Shown in pieces: positions 512 to 14,404 of a stretch of 14,483 bases of DNA. Location: NCBI GenBank assembly GCA_000388065.2, contig KB932206.1. One strand, written 5' to 3'. Source of the stretch: Fonticula alba ATCC 38817 (lineage: Eukaryota; Protista; Nucleariida). The first letter of the stretch is position 1. Each line of letters starts with the position of its first letter. Under the pieces are notes generated by a model. That model was not told the DNA's origin. It was given only the letters and a program-made list of their open reading frames with translations, and did not search any database. A program made the position numbers and the translations under genes.

Positions 512-2986
512 ATGGGCATCGTCAATCTCAGCAGCCGCGGCGCGGCGCCAGAGCCGGAAGACAACGACCCGGCCTACGCCTACAGCATGCTGACCGACCC
601 GCTGGCCACGCCGGCGCCCTACACAAGCGGCGACACCGATGCCACGTCGCACACGGCCAGCCTGGTCCGGCACTGGACGCAGTCCCGGGCATCTGGCGGC
701 CGGGCCCTCGGGTCGGCCACCAGCGCGGCCGAGGTGGTGGCGGCCCTGGGCGGCCGTGGTCTGGCGGTGTGCGATTGCGGCCGGTCGGCCGGGGCCGGTG
801 CGCCGAGCGGCGCGGCCGGCACGCCGGAGGTGCTGGTGACCCGGCGAACGGCCCTGGTGACCGGTGTGTCGCTGCAGTCCGGCATCGGGGCGGACACGGC
901 CGTGGCCCTGGCCCTGGCCGGGTATGTGACCGTGTGCACCTCGTATGAGACCCTGTCGGTGGCCGGGGGCGAGGTGGCCACCGCGGCCGCGGCGGCCGCC
1001 ATCGACACGGCGGCCCTGGACAGCGCGTCCCCCTCGCCGAGTGTGTCGCCTCGGCTTCGGCCGGTGGCCGGCCCCGAGCCGGTGGACCCGGTGGCCGGGG
1101 CCGCCGATGGGTTTGGCCCGGTGGCGGCCGAAATGGCCCCCGGGTCCGAGGCGGCCCCATCGCCGGCGCCGGGCGACGACCAGCTGCCGGACCATGTCCG
1201 CCTGCAGATCCCCCCCCGGTCGGTGACGCACATGCGCCGGCTGGTGGCGGCGCTGGCCGAGAGGACCGGCACCGAGGCGGCCGGTGTCCTGGCAACCGTG
1301 GCCGCGGGGGCCGGCGTGGATGCCGGGCGCGCCGCGGGCTTCCGCTTTGCCGGGCTCGGGTCGGCCTCCGGGGCGCCGTGCGATTGCGCCTCGCTGACGC
1401 ACCGCCATGAGGCCTGGCTGCGGTATTTGACGCTGCTGGCCGATCCCGGGGCCGGGGACTGGCTGCGGGCCCCGGCGGCCCGGTGCTTCGAGTTGCTGCC
1501 GCTGAATCTCGGCTCGCTGGCCAGTGTCACCGCCTGCGTGGGGCTCTTCCTGACCCGGGTCTTGAGCCCGCTGCCCCTGGGGCCGGGGTTGGCCGCGCCC
1601 GGGCCCACCGATCCCGATGGCAGCCAGCTGCCGGAGCACCTGTCCCGGCGGGACCCGATTGTCCCGGTGCCGCGGAGCGCCGGCGGCCCGGCGGCCATGA
1701 CCGCGGCGCCGCCCCGGCCGCTGCATGTGCTTGTGCTGAATGCCGGCATGATGAACATCCCCTACAGCACGACGGTCGATGGGATCGAGCGCCAGATGGG
1801 CGTCAACCATGTTGGCCATACGTACCTGACGCACCTGCTCCACCGGTCGCTGCTGGCCGGGGCGGAGGAGCTCCGATCGCCGGTGCACTCGTCCTCGGCC
1901 GCCGATGCCGGCGTGGCCGGGCCCGCCGGGGGCCACTCGGCCGGGCTCGACACCGCCGCCGGGGATGCCCCCGGGGCCGGGGCCGGGGCCGGGGCCGGGG
2001 CCACCCCGCGGCATGACTACGCCCGCGTGGTGACCCTGTCGTCCATCGCCCACCGCCTGGCCCCGCTTGGCATCGATGTCGACACGCTGGCCATGCGCTC
2101 GCATCCCTGGAAGTATGTGCGCTACATCCGGTACTCCGAGTCCAAGCTGGCGCAGCTGCTCTTCGCCAAGGTGCGCTCTGGCGGTGTCCTCCGCCTGTCG
2201 GTTGCCCCCGGCATCGACTTCCGCCGCCGCCTTTTTCCCTTTCCGTGCTCTCCTCCGCCCTCCGCCCGCCCTCCCTCGCCCGCAGTCTGCCCATGGTGGT
2301 GCTGACATTCGTGCATGACCCCCCCCCCTCCCCCCCGTTCGCAGGAGATCACCAACCGCTACCTGGCAGATGGGATTGTCGGCCTGGCGGTGCATCCCGG
2401 CGTGGTACACAGCACCGGGCTCGGGGCCTTCGACCCGCTGTCGCGCATGCTCTACCTCTTTGGCTGGCCCTTCATGAAGACCCCGGCCCAGGGGGCAGCT
2501 ACCAGTGTCTTCTGCTCGCTGGCCCCGGTCCGGGGGAGCCTGCTGGCGGCGCAGCTGGCCACGGCCACTTCCTGGCACACGGGGACCCCGCTGCAAGTGC
2601 GCCCCCTCCGGCCGGGGGGGTACTTCGCGGACTGCGCCCAGGAGGAGCCCAGCGGAGCCGGGCGCGACCCGCTGGCCGGGCGATCCCTCTGGCGTGCCAC
2701 CAACCAGCTGATCCTGGAGATCCTTGAAGGCCTGCAGCGGGCCGAGGCCGAGGAGCAGGAGGAGCCCGCCGACGGGGGGCAGCACCAGGCCGTCAAGCTC
2801 GAGCCCGGGGAGGAGGACGAGCAGGCCGATCGCCCTGCCTCGCCGGGGGCCGGCGGGTCTGGCAGCCGGCCGACCAAGCCCGGGGCCCACCCGACACGTG
2901 AGTCGCTCTTCTCGCTGTTTTCCGTGTCGCGGATCTTCAAGATGGACCTGGAGAGCCTGCAGCTCCCCTTCGTCGAGAGCCAGTAG
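512..2986 (+). CDS. Short-chain dehydrogenase/reductase, WWOX / retinol dehydrogenase 11-14-like; 2 exons (512-2170, 2345-2986), 766 aa with large low-complexity insertions
   Basis: SDR motifs appear in order: TALVTGVSLQSGIG (Gly-rich, 860-889), LLPLNLGSLASV, LHVLVLNAG, DGIERQMGVNHVGHTYLTHLL, RVVTLSSIAH, catalytic YSESK (2132-2146), HPGVV, KTPAQGAATSV. The phase-0 intron 2171-2344 (GTGCGC...GCTGAC...GCAG) joins LLFAK to EITNRY. The start at ATG 512 follows a pyrimidine-rich leader; upstream in-frame starts are possible but look non-coding. Confidence 0.88.
1973..2002 (+). repeat. (GGGGCC)5 hexamer repeat inside the SDR coding exon, encoding (Gly-Ala)5
   Basis: Read directly: five perfect GGGGCC units translating as GAGAGAGAGA. 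Confidence 0.95.
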
Positions 2987-3697: not shown

Positions 3698-3727
3698 NNN
3701 NNNNNNNNNNNNNNNNNNNNNNNNNNN
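3698..3727. other. Assembly gap (30 N) flanked by an identical 36-nt sequence on both sides
   Basis: CTGGTGCGCGTCCGGATTCGGTCGCGCGCGCGGGAG occurs at 3662-3697 and at 3728-3763, typical of an unmerged contig overlap. Confidence 0.9.
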
Positions 3728-4149: not shown

Positions 4150-5187
4150 TCCCGGGGTGGGGACCTGCAGTTCAAGCGTGTCGGTCGTGGTCACGGTTCC
4201 GGCCTCGGTAAGACCTCCGGTCGCGGTCACAAGGGTCAGAATGCCCGCTCGGGCAATGGCAAGACCAGCCCCTGGTTCGAGGGTGGTCAGTCGACCATCA
4301 TCGCCAAGACCCCGAAGACCGGCTTCAACAATGCGGCGTACGTCACCCGCCCCCGGGACCTGCCGGCATGCGGGGCCGGGGGGGGCCATGTGTTGCTGGC
4401 AGCCTGGCGCCGGACGCGAGGCAGGCCGGAAGCCGGCCCGGCCACTGGCCCCGCCCTGCGCCCCGACTGACGATGTGCCGGCCACTGACGCGCCTTTGGC
4501 CCTTCCTCCCCCTACCCCCCTACCCCCCTGATGCGTGGTCCTTGTGCCGACCCCTTTCCCCAGCTTCCGGAAGGACTTTGTCGAGCTGAACCTGGCCCAG
4601 CTGCAGCACTTCATCAACATCGGCCGCATCAACCCGCATGAGCCGATCACCATCAAGACCCTGTACGAGTCGGGTGTTGTTCATGGTGTCAAGGATGGCG
4701 TGAAGCTCCTGGCCGACGTGCGTCCCTTTTCCTCCGCCTCGCCTCCCTGTGGCGGGTGTTTGCCCGGGTGGGCAGCCAGCAGTCTGACCGTCCTGTGCCC
4801 TCCTTGCCGTCGCACCTTGTCATCCGCCTGGGCGGCCTGTCGCGTGGATGCTTGCGCACACAGGGTCGCGATCTTTTCTACTCCAAGGTCGACATCCAGG
4901 TGTCTAAGGGTGCGCATTTGGCGCGGCGGCCTTGCTGGGTGGCTTTTTTTTTGTTGTCCTTTCCTCCTCCTCCTCCCCCGGGGGTGGCTACCCGCCTGAC
5001 CCTCCCTTCTCTCCTCCTCTCGTCCCCTTTTTTCGGTGACCGGGCCGGCCGCTCATCGTGCAGCCTCCGCGCTGGCCATTGACTGCATTGAGAGCCGCGG
5101 CGGCAAGCTGACGTGCGTTGTTGGGTTTTTCTTTTGTCGGGCTTCTCTGGCTGCTCTTTTTTTCCCGCCCCTCGCCCCTTTGATGTT

Positions 5188-5220
<33 letters not shown>

Positions 5221-5452
5221 GCCCCTCGCTGACGACGCCCATGTGCCTCCCGGTCGCGCCAGTACTGTCTACCACAACAAGCTCGGTCTGCGGGCCCACA
5301 TCAAGCCCCAGTCCTTCCTGGCCAAGAGCCGTCCGCTTCCCCGCCAGGCCCTGCCCACCCGTCGCGCGGACCTCGAGTATTACCGCGACCCGGCGCGCCG
5401 TGGCTACCTGGTCCCGACCGCGGCGACGGACGCCTCTTCGGAGGTCGACTAA
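3848..5452 (+). CDS. MRPL15: Mitochondrial large-subunit ribosomal protein uL15m; 6 exons (3848-4009, 4171-4337, 4564-4717, 4864-4909, 5064-5112, 5263-5452), 255 aa
   Basis: The uL15 signature [43 protein letters not shown] is present, followed by [31 protein letters not shown] and the uL15m-type C-terminus [12 protein letters not shown]. The Ser/Ala/Arg-rich, acid-free N-terminus resembles a mitochondrial presequence. All five GT-AG introns keep the frame (phases 0,2,0,1,2); the CDS is 768 nt. Confidence 0.93.
4121..4148 (+). repeat. (CCTG)7 microsatellite in uL15m intron 1, preceded by a (TC)n tract
   Basis: Read directly. Confidence 0.95.
5188..5217 (+). repeat. (GCC)10 microsatellite in uL15m intron 5
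   Basis: Read directly; it lies just upstream of the GCTGAC branch point (5228-5233). Confidence 0.95.
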
Positions 5453-5931: not shown

Positions 5932-6398
5932 NNNNNNNNNNNNNNNNNNNNNNNNNNNNNNNNNNNNNNNNNNNNNNNNNNNNNNNNNNNNNNNNNNNNN
6001 NNNNNNNNNNNNNNNNNNNNNNNNNNNNNNNNNNNNNNNNNNNNNNNNNNNNNNNNNNNNNNNNNNNNNNNNNNNNNNNNNNNNNNNNNNNNNNNNNNNN
6101 NNNNNNNNNNNNNNNNNNNNNNNNNNNNNNNNNNNNNNNNNNNNNNNNNNNNNNNNNNNNNNNNNNNNNNNNNNNNNNNNNNNNNNNNNNNNNNNNNNNN
6201 NNNNNNNNNNNNNNNNNNNNNNNNNNNNNNNNNNNNNNNNNNNNNNNNNNNNNNNNNNNNNNNNNNNNNNNNNNNNNNNNNNNNNNNNNNNNNNNNNNNN
6301 NNNNNNNNNNNNNNNNNNNNNNNNNNNNNNNNNNNNNNNNNNNNNNNNNNNNNNNNNNNNNNNNNNNNNNNNNNNNNNNNNNNNNNNNNNNNNNNNNN
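5932..6398. other. Assembly gap (467 N) beginning at a poly-G run
   Basis: Run of N; its content is unknown. Confidence 0.98.
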
Positions 6399-7580
6399 GG
6401 GGCGTGCCAGCCGGCAGGGGTGTGATTTGCCGCCCGGCCACTGGCTGCTGGCAGATGGCGGTCTGGCGCCGGGGCGGTCGATGGGTGAATGGCTCGCGCG
6501 AGGCAGCCCCTCGAGATCGGGGTCAAAGCGCCGGCTAGCGGGGCCTGGCTGTGGCCATAACCGGGTGGGAGGTGCTCCTGCTGCTTGTGCGGCGGGCGCA
6601 CCGGGGCCGGTGCATCCCGAAGCATGGCCGCATGCGGGGGGGTGTCTTTTTCCTATATTTTTTCGCGTGCCTCAGCGGCCATCACATTGGCGCGGACCAG
6701 GCGCGCGGGGCCGTGCCGCTGTCGAGTGGACATGCCTCGGCCGGCGTGAGCGGGTGCTCGGCGCAGGCGGGCCTCTGATCGGCAACCGGGGGGGGGGGGG
6801 GGGGACAAGGCCCACATCGACTGGCGACCGGGAGGGCAGTCCGGACAGGCCCGGCTCCGGGATGGTGTCGGGCATGGTGGCGTCATCTGGGTCCGGGCGA
6901 CTGACGCACGGTCCCCACCCGGACGGGCGGGGGGCCCCTCCTTCGAGAGCCGGCGAGCCGTCCTCCGGAGTGTGTCTGTCCCTCGGGAAGCCGGTCCCGT
7001 GCGGGCGGCGTCTCGGGGCCGAGCGCGCCGCCGGCGGGAATCCTTGCCGCTGCGCCGGATCCAGTGCAGCGGCATGCGGCTCGGCAGGCAGCCGGTCTGT
7101 GTAGATAACCCTCCCTTCCTGTGGGGCCTGACCGGAGCCGGGACAGGGCCGGCAGCCGGCCAGGCCGGGGGTGCACGTTTGCCGGGCCGAGGCCGGCCCA
7201 GTTGGCGGGACCCCACGCGGGGGGCCATGCCAGGGCCCAACACCGACGCCGGGTCCTCCCGAGAGGCAGGCACCGGGGTCCGGTGGCCGCGCCGAGATGT
7301 CCTCTTCCGTCTGGGGGGGGGGGCCCGCCGGGGGCCCCGGGCCTTGGTGGGGGCCCCCCCGGGGGGGGCGGCGGCCGGATGTGCCCCCCCCCCCCCCCCC
7401 CGGGTGGGAGTGCCTTGTCGTGGGCCACGCCATATGGCCAGAGTGGCTGCCCTGTCGCTCGGTGCGGCAGGCTCCCGCCCGGGCGTGTGGGCGATGGGCC
7501 GGGGGGCGAGGCTGAAGCCGACCCGCCGCGGCAAGAGCGCAACGAACAAAAGCCGCGGCGGGGACCCTCCCAGCAAGCGT

Positions 7581-7652
7581 GGGAAATTAGTCTAGTGGTA
7601 TGATTCTCGCTTAGGGTGCGAGAGGTCCCGGGTTCGATTCCCGGATTTCCCC
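7581..7652 (+). tRNA. tRNA-Pro, anticodon AGG
   Basis: The cloverleaf has acceptor stem GGGAAAT/ATTTCCC, anticodon arm CTCGC-TT AGG GT-GCGAG and T arm CCGGG-TTCGATT-CCCGG. C73 discriminator is as in eukaryotic tRNA-Pro. An oligo-T terminator follows. Confidence 0.97.
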
Positions 7653-7654
7653 GG

Positions 7655-7662
7655 TTTCTTTT
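7655..7662 (+). terminator. RNA polymerase III oligo-T terminator of tRNA-Pro
   Basis: TTTCTTTT starts 3 nt after the tRNA end; a second TCTTTT lies at about 7682-7687. Confidence 0.7.
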
Positions 7663-7774
7663 GCCGCCCGGCCGCGCGGCCTCTTTTGCGCCCTGCCTGG
7701 GACGCGCCCGGGCGTGCGCCGCGACCGAGCGCGGTCGATCAAATTGCCGGGCCAGGCTGGGTGCATCATAGCCG

Positions 7775-7848
7775 GGCCCCATAGCTCAGTTGGTTAGAGC
7801 GTCGTGCTAATAACGCGAAGGTCGTCAGTTCGATCCTGGCTGGGGCCA
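7775..7848 (+). tRNA. tRNA-Ile, anticodon AAT
   Basis: Acceptor GGCCCCA/TGGGGCC, D arm GCTC-AGTTGGTTA-GAGC, anticodon arm TCGTG-CT AAT AA-CGCGA, T loop TTCGATC. T5 terminator at 7856-7860. Confidence 0.97.
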
Positions 7849-7855
7849 GCTTGCC

Positions 7856-7860
7856 TTTTT
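7856..7860 (+). terminator. RNA polymerase III oligo-T terminator of tRNA-Ile
   Basis: TTTTT starts 8 nt after the tRNA end. Confidence 0.75.
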
Positions 7861-8235
7861 GCGCGGCCTGGTTAGGCCACTTTCCCTGTCGCTTCCCGGA
7901 GAGGCTGCCCTTGGCTTGCCGAGCGGCGGGCGGGGGAGGGGCAGATTGTTTTATTGCTCCCCCCACCGGGCGGGGCGTGGGGCTCTCCGCTTGCCCGGGG
8001 CCCGGGGCCCGGGGGGGGGGGTGCACACGGTGGGGCTCCCGTGGCGACCACGGTCCGCCCCAGCCCGACCGGGCTGCTGGGCCGAGGGGACAAAAGAGCA
8101 GGCCGCGCGTGCACACAGATGGGCTTTTTTCTCCCCCCACCCCCCCCTGTGCCTGCCTGGTGGTGCCGCGGGTGGGCATACACACAGAAGGGCCTGCCGA
8201 GTCGCCCCTCTCCCTCCCGCGCTGGAGGGGGCGGC

Positions 8236-8240
8236 AAAAA
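8236..8240 (-). terminator. RNA polymerase III oligo-T terminator of tRNA-Arg
   Basis: AAAAA on the plus strand gives TTTTT 5 nt downstream of the minus-strand tRNA. Confidence 0.75.
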
Positions 8241-8244
8241 GAAT

Positions 8245-8318
8245 TGACCACGATGCGGCTCGAACACACAACCTCCTGATCCGTAGTCAGGTGCTCTATC
8301 CAATTGAGCTACGCGGCC
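8245..8318 (-). tRNA. tRNA-Arg, anticodon ACG
   Basis: The minus strand reads GGCCGCGTAGCTCAATTGGATAGAGCACCTGACT ACG GATCAGGAGGTTGTGTGTTCGAGCCGCATCGTGGTCA. The anticodon stem is CCTGA/TCAGG, and there are several G-U pairs in the acceptor and T stems. A T5 terminator lies at 8240-8236. Confidence 0.95.
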
Positions 8319-8520
8319 ATGGGAAGCAGGCGGGACTGCGGGCATAAATGGCCGCGGATGTCGGCAGCTCCACCGGTTATGGTTCACGCCTGTCCCCGCC
8401 ACCGGGCCCCCGCCCGGGGCGCAGCCCCAGCCCGAGGCGCGGGCCGCTGGCCGGCCAACCAGCGGAGGAGCCCCCCTGGCCGGGCCTGGGTGCCGGGGCT
8501 TGTCGGCGGGCATGAGCGTG

Positions 8521-8566
8521 TGCATGCGTGCATGCGTGCATGCGTGCATGCGTGCATGCGTGCATG
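8521..8566. repeat. (TGCATGCG)5 plus partial unit, 8-bp tandem repeat
   Basis: Five perfect 8-nt units plus TGCATG, part of a strictly alternating purine/pyrimidine tract at 8516-8569. Confidence 0.95.
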
Positions 8567-9018
8567 TGTCCTGCTGCTGCCCATGCGGAGCGGGCCGGCC
8601 AAAGGCGTCCCGGGGGCGTGGCGGCCGGCGAGGGCGCGCGCGCGCAGAGGCATGGCCATGGGGCGCCGCATTCCCGGCGGTTGACCAGTTGCCAGCCCGG
8701 TGGGTGGCCAGCCGGGCCGGGGGGAATGCGGCGCACTGGGCACCGTGTGTCGGGGGATTTCGTGGGGGTGCTTGGACGTGCACAGTTTCCCCGGGCGGGC
8801 CTCGCCGGAAATCGGCCATGCCGGTGGCCGAAGCCCAGTGCGCTGCACACGGGGTCACGCCTGCGCCTCCCAGGAGAGCAGCCGCCCCCGCCCTGCTGAC
8901 AGCACGCGCTATTTCCCAGGAAGAAAAAAAAAGGACCATCTGACACCGGCCCACCATCCACAAGGCGCATGTGTATTGTCGCGAGCCCGGGCGGCGCCCG
9001 GCAGCGGCCGCCCCGCTG

Positions 9019-12000
9019 CTACGGCGGCAGGGCCACCCCCTTGAGGCGGAAGTTGAAGCGCGTGCGGCCCGGCCGGAAGAGCCCGCAGGCGACCGGGGCG
9101 CTATACTCGTCGAAGAGGAGCTCCGGCGAGAAGACCAGCGCCCCGCCGGGGGCCGCGAAGGCACGCCGCTCCAAGAGGACCATGCTGCCGTCCGGGAAGG
9201 CGGTCTCCAGGGCGGCCTGCAGGTCGCGCTGTGACAGGGCCACGCTGGCCGGCGGCGCGCGGGTGCCTGCCGGCGGGGCACCGGGCTCGGCCGGCGATGC
9301 GGCCGGTGGCCCGGCTGCAGGGGGCGGGTCGGCCTCGCCGGCGCCGGCCTCGCTTCCGGCCGGGTCGAGGCTCACCCGCATGTGGACCACGTCCAGCTGG
9401 GTGGGCGCCTCCGAAAAGTACAGGCTGGTCATGAGGGTGTCCTCGGCCCGGATGAACTGGCCGAAGTCCGCGCACACGCGGATGACCCTCGGCGTGTCGT
9501 GCGCATCGGCCAGCCGGGCAACGAACAGCCGGCCGCGGCAATCGAAGAACAGGCACTCGGCCTCGAGCTGGCAGCGGGACGTCTCGCGCAGCGACTGGAA
9601 GAGGTCGCGCGGGAGCATGAGCCCGGCGTACAGGGGGCTGGGCGTCGGCACGAAGTCCGTGTCCAGCACCATCGTCGAGCACCGTCGGGACAGGGCCAGG
9701 CCGAAGGGCCGCGGCACCAGGGTCAGCCCGTAGTCCGAGGTGTCGAAGTGGATGCGCGTCACCCCGGGGACCACGACACCGGCCTTGACCGGCTCCCGGT
9801 TGCCGCCGGTCATGTGCGATGCCGTGAAGTTGATGAAGAAGGGCCCGAGCGTCGAGGAGACAAACTGCCAGCGGCGATTGGAGGGGGTTTCCCGGTCAGC
9901 CGGCCGGCAGCGGCCGCGGGCCACCGGGCGCCGATCGGCCACGGGGATCCCCACGGGTTAGGGCATGTTTCCGGGCGGCGCCGACAGGGGCCAGGGAGGG
10001 GGCCGGGGCAAAGGGCAGCATCGACGGCGCCCGGGGCGCACCTGCATCAGTGGGATGGCGCCTCCCTTGGGGAGCTTCGCGAAGAACATGCGCTCGAGCA
10101 GCCCCGGCTCCAGGTCCGGAAGCCGGTACTCCCCATCCGAGGTGATGTGGCATGTGAGGGTCGAGAGCACCGGCGTCTGGGTCGGCGCCAGGTGGAGGAC
10201 GGTCATGTAGCGCTGGAGGAAGTTCATCCCCACCAGCACGTGGTTCGGCAGGAGGTCCAGTCTCGGGTTCTTCTGGGGCCTGGTTCGGGACCGATGGAGC
10301 GGACGTGTCCGGGCGCGCGGGGAGGGGCGTGTTACAGGGAGGTGCGGCTGGGTGGCGGGGCGCAGCAGGCGGGGGGCGGGGTGGAGGGCGGGCTCCGGGC
10401 GGTGGGGTGCACGCGAGGGGAGGCTGCCCGCCAGGGAGGCACGCGCTCGCGGCCCGACGCAGCGGGACCCCGGCCACACGGGGGCCCACCCCGAGGGACG
10501 TACACAATGCTGCCCTTGTCGTTGACCAGGATCTCCGGCCCGGGCTCCAGAAAGTAGGTCTCCAGCGAGATGAATGTCTCTTCCGGCACCATGAGCGAGT
10601 TGTGGGACACCTTGCTGGGGCTGATGTTGGTGGACACCGGCAGGCGCAGGTCCCGGCCCAGCAGCGGCAGCTGCAGCAGCACCGTGTGCGGCGGTTCCAT
10701 GATTCGGAAGCCCTCCTTGATGGCGGCATCGACAAATGTGAAGGCCGGGGTCTCGCGTGTGAGCAGGTGCCCGGACTTCAGCGGCTGCAGGTAGGCATTC
10801 ATCAGCCGGTCCACGCGCATGCTCATCAGCACGCCCGTCACCGAGATGTCGAACTCCTGCAAGGGGGCATACCCCCGCGGGCCGGGTACACCATGCCCCG
10901 GGCCGGGTGGCGGCGGGCTTCCATGCGTCAGTCGGGGCTCCCCGCTGGCCGAGGCCGCTCGACCCCCCCCCCCCCCCTTCTCCTGGCCCGCGCTCCTTAC
11001 GCACCTGTCCCACGGTCAGCACGGAGTCGTCCAGCTTCTGCAGGAACTCCCGCACCAAGTCCCCGTGCTTGGCGTAGTGCGAGAAGGACGTCTTCTTGAA
11101 GAGGACCAGCTCGATCAGGCCCACCTGCGCCGGCGAGGCGGTGGCCGCCGCCCAGAAGCAGGTCTGCTGGCTGAATATCCGCTCGAAGTCCCGCCGGTTG
11201 AGGATGATCTGCTCGTCCGACAGCGGCCTCTTCGGGTTCGGATCCGGGCTGGGGGTGGCGTGGGCGCGGCCGCACCCGCGGCGGGGAGGCGCATGTCAGA
11301 CACGGTAAGCCACATGGAAGCCACACACATGCACACATTCAGCACCCCCACGCACTAGATCATCAGCAGGTGCCCGCCCCACTGGAGGAAGGCGTCGGTC
11401 CCGTCCGGCAACCGGTGGCGCAGGCGTCGATAGACCCCCGGGCTGACGGCCGCCCAGCCGGCCCGGAAACTGGCCAGCTCGCTGGCGACCGCCGCCAGGG
11501 ACAGATGGCCGCCGTCCTCCTCGGCCCCCGCCACCGCGGGGAGCTGGACAAGCAGCCAGTGGCCGCCAGGGGCCGAGGGGTCTGCCCGGCCGGCGGTCGC
11601 TGGCCCTGACAAGTTGGCGGCCGCCGGCGGTGGGGGATCGAGCGCGGCAGCCAGGGGGGCCTCGTCGGTGGAGACCGTCAGCGCCTCGACTCGGCCGCCG
11701 CCCGGCGGCAGGCGCCCAGCCGGCCGCGGCACGTCCGGCTCCCCGAGCCAGCATATCCGCCGGACGATGCAGCACACGTCGACGCCTTGGGAGCTGAAGG
11801 AGAGCGGCTGCGAGAGAAAAGAAAAGGGGCCAGGCGACATGTCAGAAGGCGGGCGCCGCATGGCGGATCGGGGGCCCGGGTCATGCCCGCCCGGACACGC
11901 ACCCGGTCCAGTCGCATGGTGGCGTCGCCGTGCGCCTGCAGGAAGTCCAGCTTCAGGCGCTCCAGCGGGATGTCCACCGGCTGGCCTGAGGCACCCTCCC

Positions 12001-14404
12001 GGACGAAGGACACCTCGACGGACTCGGCCACCGGCAGGTCCGGCGCCGGGGACAGGACCATCGGCTCCAGGCCGAAGCCGCCCAGCATGTCCAGGTCCCG
12101 GGGATGGATCGCGGCCCCGAACCGCGTCACTCGGTCGCTGGCACTGGGGCGGGGGGTCAGTTCACGCGCATGCGTCTCTTTGGAAGGGCCACGGGCGAGG
12201 AGTACGCACCGGATGTCGAGGTGCGCCCCGCCGCTGGTGAAGCGCACGACATCGACCGGGCAGCCGCTCGGGCTGGCGATGCGCCGGAAGGCCGCCGGCG
12301 ACACGAGGACCGTGCGCTCGGTGCCGGGCGTGCCCGGGGGCAGGGGCTCCGGGGCCAGCATGACCACGCCCGGGTCCTCCGCATCCGGCCAGATGGCCAC
12401 CAGGTGGTTCTGGTCGGCCGGCAGGCCGCGCGGCGTCTGGACATAGAGGACGGTCGCCGCGGGCATGGATGTGCGCTCAGGAGCGCCATGGCTCTCGAGC
12501 GTGGGGGCAATTCGGGCTGCAGCCGCGCTGCCGAGCTGAGCGGGGCCGGGTGGGAGGCCGCGCGTCCCCAGTCGAGCCGGCCTGGGGCAACTCAGCTCGG
12601 ACGCATGGCGGCCCGGGACACCCGGATGGGCCTTGCTGTGGCGGCTAGACTCGCCACAGCCTCGCCCGCCCGGGCCTGGCCTCGTGGCATCCTCCGCAGG
12701 CAGCCGGCCACTTGGCGCCTTTCGGGCATGGAGATGAGCCGGCGTCGGGGCGATGCACACGGGCCGCGGCTTCGGGGGCTCGGGCGGCAGTGGCACCGGG
12801 GCGGACGGCGGGGCAACCCGGCGGCGTTCGTCCGCAGATGCCACCCCCACGAGGACATCGCGGAAGTCCCGGTCCATGAGCCGCTTCACCCGGATCGAGG
12901 CATGCGGCTCCTCGAGGTGGACGATCTGTCGTGGCGGGGGGTCAGGGCGGGATCGCACGAGAGCAGGCCGGTGGGGCTGTCGGGACGCACGTCGCCCACG
13001 CGCAACGGCGCGCCGGCCAGCTGGCTGAGTATCCGCTGGCGCTCATGCGGACGAAGCCCCTGGGGGCTGTCGACCCACGCGACGGCCAGGGCGGGCGGGG
13101 CGTCGCACAGGGTCAAGCGGGCCGGGCGCCCGTGCAGCTCCATCCCCAGCGACGCGAGCAGGCGCCGGTCCGCCCGCAGATATATCCCAGGTGGGGTCTT
13201 GCGCTGGCAAATACTGATGAGAGGATGTCAGTCCATGCCGGGGGAACGGCCGCATCCGGAAGACCGGCCCCCCCCGAAGCGCGGGCTCACAGCGCACCGG
13301 ATCTGGAAAACGCGCTTCTCATGCGCCGCGTAGAAGGGGCCGTCCGGGGCGCCCGGGCGCCATGCCGCCAGCAGCCGGGCCACCGGGCCGCCGGCCGGGG
13401 CGAGCAGCACATCCAGGTTGGGACCCGGCGCGAACATCGCATGGACCATGTGGTGCTGCTCCGGGAGGGGCGACGCGCCCGGGGCCAGGACCGTCGGGCC
13501 GCCCGGTGGTGCCAGGGCCACGACCACCGGCGCGTCCAGCAGGTCCATGCTCGGCCCGGCGGTCAGCACGATCCGCGTCGACGGGCCGATCAGGCCGCAT
13601 GGGGAGACGCCCCCGCGGCCGCCGGCGACGGCGGCGTCCGTACGGAGCTCAACCACCGCCAGCTCCAGCGCGGGGGCCCCCTCGGTCGGCAGGGTCAGCG
13701 CCAGTGGCAGAACCTGCCAACGGCCAACCCGGCGGGGAACATGGTCAGACACATGTGCAACATAGAGGATAAAGACACCCGGCGTCCTGGTCGCACCTCC
13801 GACGCGTGCAGCAGCAGCCCGTGGCCGGCGAGAGCCGCCTTGGCCGCGGCCTCCAGCGCCGAGAACGGGATCTGGTGCGGTCGATCATCCACGGAGGCGG
13901 CCACACCCACCGGGCGCACGGCGAAGCAGGCCGCCTCCAGCGCCGGCGGCAGGAACCGCTGCACTTCCAGCACGCCCGCCCTCCCGAAAGGAAAGAGCCG
14001 ATAGAATTCGTCGCCGGGGAGAACGCAAAAGTCGGCGGCCCGGGGATCCGGGCTGGGGGGGGGGGGAGAGAGAGAAAAAGAGCAGGTCGCGCCCGAGTGT
14101 GAGCGGCCCCCGGAAAGGGACGGCAGCAGCGGCGGAGGAGGCACACGTACCGCGCCCGGAAGAGCCGGTCATTGGCAGTCAGGAAGATGTGCTCGCCGGG
14201 GTGAGCCCCGGCCGCGGCGGCCAGCTCGTCAAAGAGCCCAGGGGCGATGAGCAGCTGGCTCGGCGAGGTGTAGCCGCCCTCGAAGAACCGGGCCCCCGGG
14301 CACACCGGCCAGGCCGCCGTGTCCAGGGGCAGATCCACCCCGCCGAGGCGGAGCAGTCGCCGGGGCGGGGCCGATGTGGGGGAGCCCGCCGCGCGGAAGG
14401 CCAT
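9019..14404 (-). CDS. Uncharacterised 1434-aa protein made of six tandem CDC48/p97/NSF N-domain-like modules, no ATPase domain; 10 exons (14404-14151, 14052-13797, 13713-13298, 13213-12991, 12925-11903, 11807-11356, 11248-11005, 10856-10504, 10279-10042, 9864-9019)
   Basis: Nine introns have GTGCG/GTACGT donors and YAG acceptors, several with a visible CTGAC branch point. They join the ORF-track fragments into one 4305-nt frame ending at TAG 9021-9019. The gene model is well supported. The product call rests on recurring motifs that resemble p97 N-domain segments (by eye). The start at 14404 is near the window edge, so further upstream exons cannot be excluded. Confidence 0.72.

What the first reader, a model, noticed from the sequence alone, without database searches (positions are those of the whole stretch)
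9865..14150. Introns recur at equivalent positions and phases in the repeat modules
Seen: intron phases in gene order are 2,0,2,0,0,2,0,2,0. The four phase-2 introns (14150-14053, 13297-13214, 11355-11249, 10503-10280) all interrupt the residue ending the strand before the second barrel helix: LFRAR|PDP, VFQIR|ICQ, LLMIY|PDP, KGSIV|PQK. The five phase-0 introns (13796-13714, 12990-12926, 11902-11808, 11004-10857, 10041-9865) all fall at the same place in the second subdomain: LHASE|VLPL, LRVGD|IVHL, MRLDR|PLSF, LTVGQ|EFDI, IPLMQ|FVSS. Inference: the gene arose by DNA-level tandem duplication of a two-intron ancestral module. This supports the repeat model independently of the weak protein similarity.
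Basis: partly seen in the sequence, partly recalled or inferred. Interest (0 to 1): 0.7.

Follow-up and report, generated by a model that had tools for sequence, protein, structure and literature searches.

The report
Six-repeat gene keeps two ancestral introns
A Fonticula alba gene encodes six look-alike domains, and each repeat carries the same two introns at the same spots, so the gene grew by repeatedly copying one stretch of intron-containing DNA; this is a clean example of a well-known process.

Summary
All nine listed introns are GT..AG, and their phases and junction peptides are as stated. With it the phases alternate strictly 2,0 five times, and the spliced protein is identical to the public annotation, Fonticula alba H696_04152 (1412 aa).

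Profile-profile alignments made without intron information link all six modules. They place the intron sites on the very same residue in 22 of 25 pair comparisons. AlphaFold2 models show the same secondary-structure context at every site. Foldseek matches the modules to the NSF/Sec18/p97 N-terminal domain, at fold level only, with no Pfam or PDB sequence hit.

Paralogues share the intron positions. A divergent paralogue, H696_05952, still has both introns in module 6, at the sites that are intronless here. The ancestor therefore had 6 x 2 introns, and this clade lost the last two.

The mechanism is classical. The case is a new instance in an orphan, F. alba-only gene family. No RNA evidence was available.

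The parts
9019..14404 (-). Gene H696_04152 of Fonticula alba: ATG at 14404, stop at 9021-9019, 11 exons, 1412-aa product
   Evidence: Spliced ORF. Product is identical to P0021 / XP_009496311.1.
14053..14150 (-). Intron 1, 98 nt, phase 2, module 1 (LFRAR|PDP)
   Evidence: Same site in paralogue H696_06123.
13714..13796 (-). Intron 2, 83 nt, phase 0, module 1 (LHASE|VLPL)
13214..13297 (-). Intron 3, 84 nt, phase 2, module 2 (VFQIR|ICQ)
   Evidence: It carries an in-frame stop if retained.
12926..12990 (-). Intron 4, 65 nt, phase 0, module 2 (LRVGD|IVHL)
12144..12209 (-). Intron 5, 66 nt, phase 2, module 3 (HLDIR|ASD). It is in frame and has no stop.
   Evidence: donor score 12.1, above the family median. 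It is present in the public annotation and at the same site in paralogues (DVR|PSD, DVR|PGD).
11808..11902 (-). Intron 6, 95 nt, phase 0, module 3 (MRLDR|PLSF)
11249..11355 (-). Intron 7, 107 nt, phase 2, module 4 (LLMIY|PDP)
10857..11004 (-). Intron 8, 148 nt, phase 0, module 4 (LTVGQ|EFDI)
10280..10503 (-). Intron 9, 224 nt, phase 2, module 5 (KGSIV|PQK)
9865..10041 (-). Intron 10, 177 nt, phase 0, module 5 (IPLMQ|FVSS)
13579..14404 (-). Module 1 (aa 1-215), predicted NSF-N/Cdc48-N-like two-subdomain fold
   Evidence: hhalign; AF2 and DSSP; Foldseek.
12836..13578 (-). Module 2 (aa 216-413)
12464..12835 (-). Insert of 124 aa (aa 414-537) between modules 2 and 3. It is absent from all paralogues and is not part of the repeat.
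   Evidence: Alignment. No codon periodicity. Predicted disordered, pLDDT about 28. No convincing splice sites.
11679..12463 (-). Module 3 (aa 538-745)
10734..11678 (-). Module 4 (aa 746-975)
9733..10733 (-). Module 5 (aa 976-1175)
9022..9732 (-). Module 6 (aa 1176-1412), intronless in this gene
9514..9516 (-). Codon R1248 (RLFVAR|LADA): the module-6 equivalent of the phase-2 intron site, with no intron here
   Evidence: It aligns to the phase-2 site of each of modules 1-5. Paralogue H696_05952 has a phase-2 intron at this very site (KFFLVR|LSDV).
9169..9171 (-). Codon E1363 (MVLLE|RRAF): the module-6 equivalent of the phase-0 intron site, with no intron here
   Evidence: It aligns to the phase-0 sites of modules 3 and 4 exactly and of module 5 within one residue. 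Paralogue H696_05952 has a phase-0 intron here (VVQYE|KREF).

Best explanation
The window holds Fonticula alba gene H696_04152. Its 1412-aa product consists of six tandem modules of about 200-240 aa (plus one 124-aa insert). Each module is predicted to fold like the N-terminal domain of NSF/Sec18/p97, that is, a double-psi beta-barrel followed by a second alpha/beta subdomain.

An ancestral one-module coding segment already carried two introns. One was phase 2, at the end of the barrel strand that precedes the second helix. The other was phase 0, just before the two closing strands of the second subdomain. Serial tandem duplication of genomic DNA, most simply by unequal recombination, copied the exons together with both introns until there were six modules and 12 introns. 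The two-exon unit bounded by phase-0 introns is frame-symmetric, so breakpoints inside those introns would keep the reading frame. Whether that was the actual unit is inferred, not shown.

The whole six-module gene then multiplied into at least 12 paralogues, several of them in tandem clusters in F. alba. In the clade that contains this gene, the two 3'-most introns (module 6) were lost together. That is what recombination with a partial cDNA would produce (inferred).

Shown here: the junctions, the phases, the homology of the modules, the identity of intron positions across modules and paralogues, and the retention of both module-6 introns in H696_05952.

Inferred: the recombination mechanism, the duplication unit and order, and the biochemical role. 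The likeliest role is a multivalent protein-binding scaffold, because this fold is the adaptor/substrate-binding part of AAA+ ATPases and no ATPase domain is present.
For: - **Gene model.** Nine of 10 introns are required to keep the ORF, and all 10 have GTRCG...CAG signals. The product is identical to the annotated XP_009496311.1.
- **Module homology.** hhalign probabilities reach 95.7% (E = 9e-9). All six modules are linked, and 11 of 15 pairs score above every one of 60 reversed or shuffled controls.
- **Intron register.** Intron sites fall on the same residue in 22 of 25 comparisons, with identical phases. A blind MAFFT alignment puts them in the same columns.
- **Structural register.** The DSSP context is the same in all six modules (from the models).
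- **Fold.** Foldseek top hits are NSF-N (1qcs/1qdn), Sec18p-N (1cr5) and p97-N, with TM 0.52-0.60 over about 200 columns and E of 2e-7 to 1e-5.
- **Paralogues.** Exact exon mapping shows the same sites and phases in H696_05766, 04153, 06123 and 05299. H696_05952 has both introns in module 6.
- **No other introns.** Every intron mapped in the family lies at one of the 12 canonical sites.
Against: - No transcript evidence was available, so the junctions rest on signals, ORF continuity, the public annotation and paralogue conservation.
- Single-sequence similarity between modules is weak; only M4-M5 is significant by Smith-Waterman.
- Four of 15 profile pairs (M1-M2, M2-M3, M2-M5, M2-M6) do not exceed the controls, although they align in the correct register.
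- The AF2 models have moderate confidence (mean pLDDT 72 and 59).
- The resemblance to NSF-N is structural only, with no Pfam or PDB sequence hit.
- Equivalent introns share no sequence. Given the divergence, this neither supports nor contradicts inheritance.
- The duplication order and the unit boundaries are unresolved.
Confidence: 0.9

Rival explanations
1. The modules duplicated first, for example from an intronless or one-intron unit. Introns were then inserted independently at the same two sites in each module, because those sites attract insertion (proto-splice sites, or a targeted introner-like element).
For: All introns share strong signals: GTGCGT, a CTGAC branch-like motif in 8 of 10, and CAG. 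Introns 2 and 7 share a CATGTGTCTGAC stretch. Equivalent introns have no detectable sequence homology.
Against: It needs 12 insertions landing on only two alignment positions with exact phase. The exon nucleotides flanking the sites are not conserved between modules. Intron interiors are not copies of one element, and the only similar pair (introns 2 and 7) belongs to different classes. All mapped introns of the family lie at these sites and none elsewhere.
Confidence: 0.04
2. The array was not built by duplication within the gene. It was built by repeated exon shuffling or recombination, in which modules from separate paralogous genes that already had the two-intron structure were brought in.
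For: The family has many paralogues in tandem clusters, so unequal exchange between neighbouring genes is plausible. The order of duplications could not be resolved from the hhalign scores.
Against: Every paralogue examined has the same modules in the same order, and module i of one gene is closest to module i of another (alignments). The six-module array therefore predates the gene family. Neighbouring modules tend to be the most similar (M4-M5, M3-M4, M5-M6), as tandem duplication predicts. No one-module or two-module relatives were found among 1.84 billion representatives.
Confidence: 0.05
3. The periodicity is an artefact of gene modelling or of chance, and the 'introns' are not spliced as drawn.
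For: No RNA data were examined. One intron (12209-12144) and the 372-nt insert can both be read through without breaking the frame.
Against: Nine of 10 introns break the frame or carry stops if retained. The splice signals are canonical, and the model equals the independent public annotation. Paralogues have conserved exon flanks with introns of different length and sequence at the same sites. Codon-position GC periodicity is present in the exons and absent in the introns. The chance expectation is 0.04 matches against 22 observed.
Confidence: 0.01

Closest known systems
N-terminal domains of NSF/Sec18p and p97/VCP/Cdc48 (PDB 1QCS, 1QDN, 1CR5, 3QQ7; double-psi beta-barrel plus second subdomain)
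   Same: Each module is predicted to have the same two-subdomain fold. Foldseek gives probability 1.00, E down to 2.6e-7 and TM 0.52-0.60 on the target over about 200 columns.
   Different: There is no detectable sequence or profile similarity to Pfam or to PDB sequences. No AAA+ ATPase domain follows. There are six copies in a row instead of one. Relatedness by descent is not shown.
PEX1/PEX6 tandem N1-N2 domains and Ufd1 (Cdc48-N-like folds that are duplicated, or occur outside the usual N-D1-D2 arrangement); from my own knowledge, not tested here
   Same: The same fold is used in two tandem copies (PEX1/PEX6) or without an ATPase (Ufd1).
   Different: Those proteins have one or two copies and are conserved across eukaryotes. 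This protein has six copies, no ATPase, and is confined to an F. alba-only family.
Classical internally duplicated genes whose repeats keep intron positions, such as serum albumin/alpha-fetoprotein (three domains) and ovomucoid (three Kazal domains); from my own knowledge
   Same: Periodic intron positions and phases record duplication of genomic DNA that already carried introns.
   Different: In those genes the repeats are obvious from sequence. Here pairwise sequence similarity is almost erased, and the intron pattern is the sharper signal.
Gene-structure-based homology detection for rapidly evolving families (bicycle genes of aphids, PMC9168663; abstract seen)
   Same: Exon-intron structure is used as a homology marker when sequences have diverged beyond recognition.
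   Different: That work compares separate genes. Here the comparison is between repeats inside one gene.

Membership tests
Cdc48/NSF N-terminal domain (Pfam CDC48_N + CDC48_2, NSF-N) | Two-subdomain fold: double-psi beta-barrel followed by an alpha/beta second subdomain | tested here: met
   AF2 models and Foldseek against PDB. Top hits are NSF-N, Sec18p-N and p97-N, with TM 0.52-0.60 over about 200 columns. This rests on predicted structure only.
Cdc48/NSF N-terminal domain (Pfam CDC48_N + CDC48_2, NSF-N) | Sequence-profile match to the family models or to solved members | tested here: not met
   Pfam gave 0 families at E <= 10. phmmer and profile hmmsearch against PDB sequences gave no NSF/p97 hit. 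The exhaustive HMMER scan found only the F. alba family.
Cdc48/NSF N-terminal domain (Pfam CDC48_N + CDC48_2, NSF-N) | Placed N-terminal to AAA+ D1/D2 ATPase domains | tested here: not met
   The protein is fully accounted for by six modules plus linkers. There is no AAA domain hit, and the models show no such domain.
Cdc48/NSF N-terminal domain (Pfam CDC48_N + CDC48_2, NSF-N) | Binds adaptors or substrates (UBX/SHP/ubiquitin, SNAP-SNARE) in the inter-subdomain groove | not testable with these tools
   This needs binding assays or complex structures.
Internally repeated gene made by tandem genomic duplication with inherited introns | The repeat units are homologous | tested here: met
   hhalign reaches 95.7% and links all six modules; 11 of 15 pairs score above all 60 controls.
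Internally repeated gene made by tandem genomic duplication with inherited introns | Introns lie at the same alignment position and phase in the repeats | tested here: met
   22 of 25 comparisons are exact and the rest are off by +1, +4 and -6 residues at an indel; phases are identical. Blind MAFFT alignment agrees, and the DSSP context is the same.
Internally repeated gene made by tandem genomic duplication with inherited introns | The pattern is ancestral, that is, shared by paralogues, with exceptions explained by loss | tested here: met
   Five paralogues share the sites. H696_05952 retains both module-6 introns that are missing here.
Internally repeated gene made by tandem genomic duplication with inherited introns | The duplicated unit is frame-compatible | tested here: met
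   Phases alternate 2,0, so the two-exon unit bounded by phase-0 introns is symmetric (0-0). The actual breakpoints are unknown.
Internally repeated gene made by tandem genomic duplication with inherited introns | The junctions are used in mature mRNA | not testable with these tools
   No RNA-seq or cDNA was accessible. The Logan ORF fragments read into introns, so they are genomic.
Introner-like or other copy-and-paste intron families | The introns are sequence copies of one element | tested here: not met
   Pairwise alignment of intron interiors finds only one short shared motif (introns 2 and 7, which belong to different classes) and nothing between equivalent introns.

The most novel reading that the evidence does not exclude
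H696_04152 and its 11 or more paralogues may be a previously undescribed protein architecture: six tandem NSF/Cdc48-N-like adaptor-binding domains with no ATPase. The family is confined to Fonticula alba and diverges fast (about 35-40% identity even between neighbouring genes). Such proteins could act as multivalent scaffolds or decoys for ligands that normally dock on AAA+ N-domains. In this family the intron pattern is a better record of the origin than the sequence is.
Probability: 0.3. Interest if true: 0.5.

Novelty: new member of a known kind. Interest (0 to 1): 0.35.

Why it matters
- It is an unusually clean case of gene structure outliving sequence similarity. Twelve introns in the family trace back to two ancestral ones, and the intron sites align to the residue although most module pairs are unrecognisable by pairwise sequence comparison.
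- It gives a concrete, datable series of events: module duplication, then gene-family expansion, then loss of the two 3' introns. The organism sits near the base of the fungal side of the opisthokonts.
- It assigns a fold and a domain architecture to a family of "hypothetical proteins".
- It does not reveal a new mechanism.

Tried and rejected
- **Sequence searches.** Pfam on the whole protein and phmmer or profile searches against PDB sequences gave no hits. The NSF-N assignment therefore rests on predicted structure only.
- **Single-sequence comparison of modules.** Smith-Waterman with shuffles made only M4-M5 clearly significant. Paralogue profiles were needed.
- **Intron homology.** I looked for sequence homology between equivalent introns and found none. 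The only notable pair, introns 2 and 7, is non-equivalent and shares a branch-site-like motif.
- **The 124-aa insert.** I tried to explain aa 414-537 as an unannotated intron. Its composition looks non-coding, but no in-frame GT/GC-AG pair scores within the range of known family introns. It is left open.
- I used exon-wise fragments aligned to paralogues instead. A first fragment alignment was partly misaligned across repeats and was discarded.
- **H696_06122.** Exon mapping in L004 was confounded by matches to neighbouring paralogues and was not used.
- **Donor gene.** The intron positions of F. alba NSF, CDC48, PEX1/6 and UFD1 were not examined. I had no way to fetch those genes without spending a very large search on a secondary question.
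- **Transcript data.** A literature search found no F. alba transcript data for this locus.


Full report
**What is in the window.**
The region is about 73% G+C. It carries a minus-strand gene that starts at ATG 14404 and stops at 9021-9019. All nine begin GTRCG and end CAG, and their phases and junction peptides are exactly as quoted.

**A tenth intron.**
I found a tenth intron at 12209-12144 (GTGCGT...CTGAC...CAG). It is 66 nt long, in frame and free of stops, which is why reading by eye passed through it. It is phase 2 and splits HLDIR|ASD.

With it, the phases alternate strictly 2,0,2,0,2,0,2,0,2,0. The five exons that run from a phase-2 to a phase-0 intron are 256, 223, 241, 244 and 238 nt.

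The 10-intron product (1412 aa) is identical to the annotated protein XP_009496311.1, hypothetical protein H696_04152 of Fonticula alba. Nine of the ten introns break the frame or introduce a stop if retained. Exons show strong codon-position GC periodicity (0.73/0.51/0.91), and introns do not.

**Are the modules really repeats?**
Single-sequence Smith-Waterman comparison finds only M4-M5 clearly significant (z = 8.5). The protein has no Pfam hit and no PDB sequence hit.

A word-indexed search found three F. alba paralogues at about 35% identity. An exhaustive HMMER profile scan of 1.84 billion representatives found 19 proteins. The ten I traced to a source are annotated F. alba proteins or unnamed Logan ORF fragments that cluster with them, and nothing outside the family was found.

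I built a profile for each module from 5-11 paralogues and compared them with hhalign:

| Module pair | Probability | E-value |
|---|---|---|
| M4-M5 | 95.7% | 9e-9 |
| M3-M4 | 93% | 3.1e-7 |
| M5-M6 | 92% | 5.2e-7 |
| M2-M4 | 81% | 1.3e-5 |
| M3-M6 | 65% | 5.9e-5 |
| M1-M6 | 57% | 1.1e-4 |
| M1-M3 | 48% | 1.8e-4 |

Reversed-column and column-shuffled controls never score above 21.4 in 60 comparisons. The real pairs score from 61 down to 17.9, and 11 of 15 exceed every control. All six modules are therefore linked.

**Do the introns fall in the same columns?**
The alignments were made from protein sequence alone. In the hhalign alignments, the residue carrying (phase 2) or preceding (phase 0) an intron in one module aligns to the corresponding residue of the other module in 22 of 25 covered comparisons. 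The three exceptions are +1, +4 and -6 residues, and all involve a small indel next to the phase-2 site of module 5.

Random placement would give roughly 25/600 = 0.04 exact matches.

A blind MAFFT L-INS-i alignment of 20 module sequences agrees. It puts the phase-0 intron in one column for M2-M5, with M1 two columns away. It puts the phase-2 intron in one column for M1, M2 and M4, with M3 and M5 shifted by gap placement.

**Structure.**
AlphaFold2 was run with paralogue alignments. It gave mean pLDDT 72 for aa 784-1412 (M4-M6) and 59 for aa 1-751 (M1-M3). The folded parts mostly score 70-90, and the 124-aa insert is disordered.

Foldseek against the PDB returns, for both models, the N-terminal domains of NSF (1qcs, 1qdn), Sec18p (1cr5), p97/VCP and SPATA5. 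These hits have probability 1.00, E of 2.6e-7 to about 1e-5, about 200 aligned columns, and TM 0.52-0.60 normalised on the isolated N-domain.

It is not supported at sequence level, and no ATPase domain is present.

The DSSP strings show one and the same pattern around the intron sites in all six modules:
- strand, helix, strand, strand, with the phase-2 site 0-2 residues from the end of that last strand;
- then loop, short strand, helix, strand, strand, long helix, short strand;
- then the phase-0 site, followed by two long strands.

**Paralogues and the sixth module.**
Exact exon mapping of the annotated paralogues shows introns only at the same sites and phases:
- H696_05766: nine introns.
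- H696_04153: eight introns.
- H696_06123: both module-1 sites and both module-2 sites.
- H696_05299 and H696_06124: module 6 is intronless, as it is in the window gene.

The most divergent paralogue is H696_05952. It also has a phase-2 intron at KFFLVR|LSDV and a phase-0 intron at VVQYE|KREF in its last module. These are exactly the positions that hhalign identifies in the window gene as the module-6 equivalents: R1248 in RLFVAR|LADA (window 9516-9514) and E1363 in MVLLE|RRAF (window 9171-9169).

The family ancestor therefore had two introns in each of six modules. The lineage leading to this gene lost the last two. Joint loss of adjacent 3' introns is what recombination with a partial reverse transcript would give; this is an inference from general knowledge.

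**Interpretation.**
The simplest account is serial tandem duplication of genomic DNA that already held both introns. The whole six-module gene was then duplicated into tandem clusters:
- H696_04152/3/4 at this locus, with a scaffold gap between 04153 and 04152;
- H696_05766/7;
- H696_06118/22/23/24.

The two-exon unit bounded by phase-0 introns is frame-symmetric. Breakpoints in those introns would be neutral to the frame, but I could not determine the real unit or the order of events.

Independent insertion at 12 sites is very unlikely. The exon flanks are not conserved, and the introns are not copies of one element. A modelling artefact is very unlikely for the reasons given under the gene model above. 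What is missing is transcript evidence.

**Comparison and novelty.**
Periodic introns in internally duplicated genes are textbook material (serum albumin/alpha-fetoprotein, ovomucoid; my own knowledge). Gene structure has also been used as a homology marker for fast-evolving families (PMC9168663, seen).

This is a new instance, not a new kind. Three things are new here:
- the corrected and extended pattern (10 introns here, 12 ancestrally);
- the fold assignment for a family of hypothetical proteins;
- the unusual architecture of six NSF-N-like domains without an ATPase, apparently confined to F. alba.

The function is unknown. By analogy with the fold's role in AAA+ ATPases, I consider a multivalent protein-binding scaffold most likely, with low confidence.

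Noticed in passing
window 12464-12835 (-), aa 414-537 of the product: A 124-aa Pro/Ala/Gly/Arg-rich insert lies between modules 2 and 3 and is absent from all paralogues. It has no codon-position GC periodicity (0.79/0.73/0.75 against 0.73/0.51/0.91 for the rest) and is predicted disordered (pLDDT about 28). It looks non-coding, but it has no splice-site pair in the range of known family introns, and it is part of the public protein. It could be a young exonised insertion or a mis-annotated intron with weak sites.
   Followed up: partly
window 3698-3727 and 5932-6398; L002 from about 9485 to its end: There are runs of N (assembly gaps) inside the window. A long N run lies between the neighbouring paralogue H696_04153 and this gene, so the true spacing of the tandem paralogues is unknown.
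   Followed up: no
window about 4440-4700 and 5160-5400 (+): A ribosomal protein L27a/L15-type gene. ORF 4535-4999 matches Pfam PF00828 at E = 6e-8. Codon periodicity on the + strand appears in two blocks, which suggests at least one intron.
   Followed up: no
window about 720-2900 (+): About 2.2 kb shows strong coding periodicity in one + frame. ORF 29-2305 has only a sub-threshold adh_short match (E = 0.002, 18 bits against a cut-off of 26.6). This neighbouring gene is unidentified.
   Followed up: no
window about 6500-8900: About 2.4 kb downstream of the gene's stop has no codon periodicity on either strand despite many long ORFs. It is probably UTR or intergenic sequence. Long ORFs here are a by-product of 70-78% G+C.
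   Followed up: no
introns of the gene, e.g. window 13744-13748, 11295-11299: Eight of the ten introns contain a CTGAC branch-site-like motif, 13-71 nt from the 3' end. Introns 2 and 7, which are non-equivalent positions, share CATGTGTCTGAC (z = 6.9 in a shuffle test). This may be an extended branch-site consensus in F. alba.
   Followed up: partly
L002 2749-2952 (upstream of the annotated start of H696_04153); L001 7973 onward (H696_05767): The annotated paralogues look truncated or partly mis-modelled. An unannotated module-1 exon (ARPDPRAA...) lies upstream of the start of H696_04153. The protein of H696_05767 (P0006) contains stretches that do not align with the family and look like frame errors or intron read-through.
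   Followed up: partly
P0012 (Logan ORF, 125 aa) against window 11358-11807 (-): An ORF from an independent public read assembly matches exon 7 but differs at 4 internal residues (NSSGP against NLSGP; AKFPAGRAAV against ASFRAGWAAV). It stops where the intron begins, so it comes from genomic DNA. This is either a second F. alba isolate or sequence errors in one assembly.
   Followed up: no
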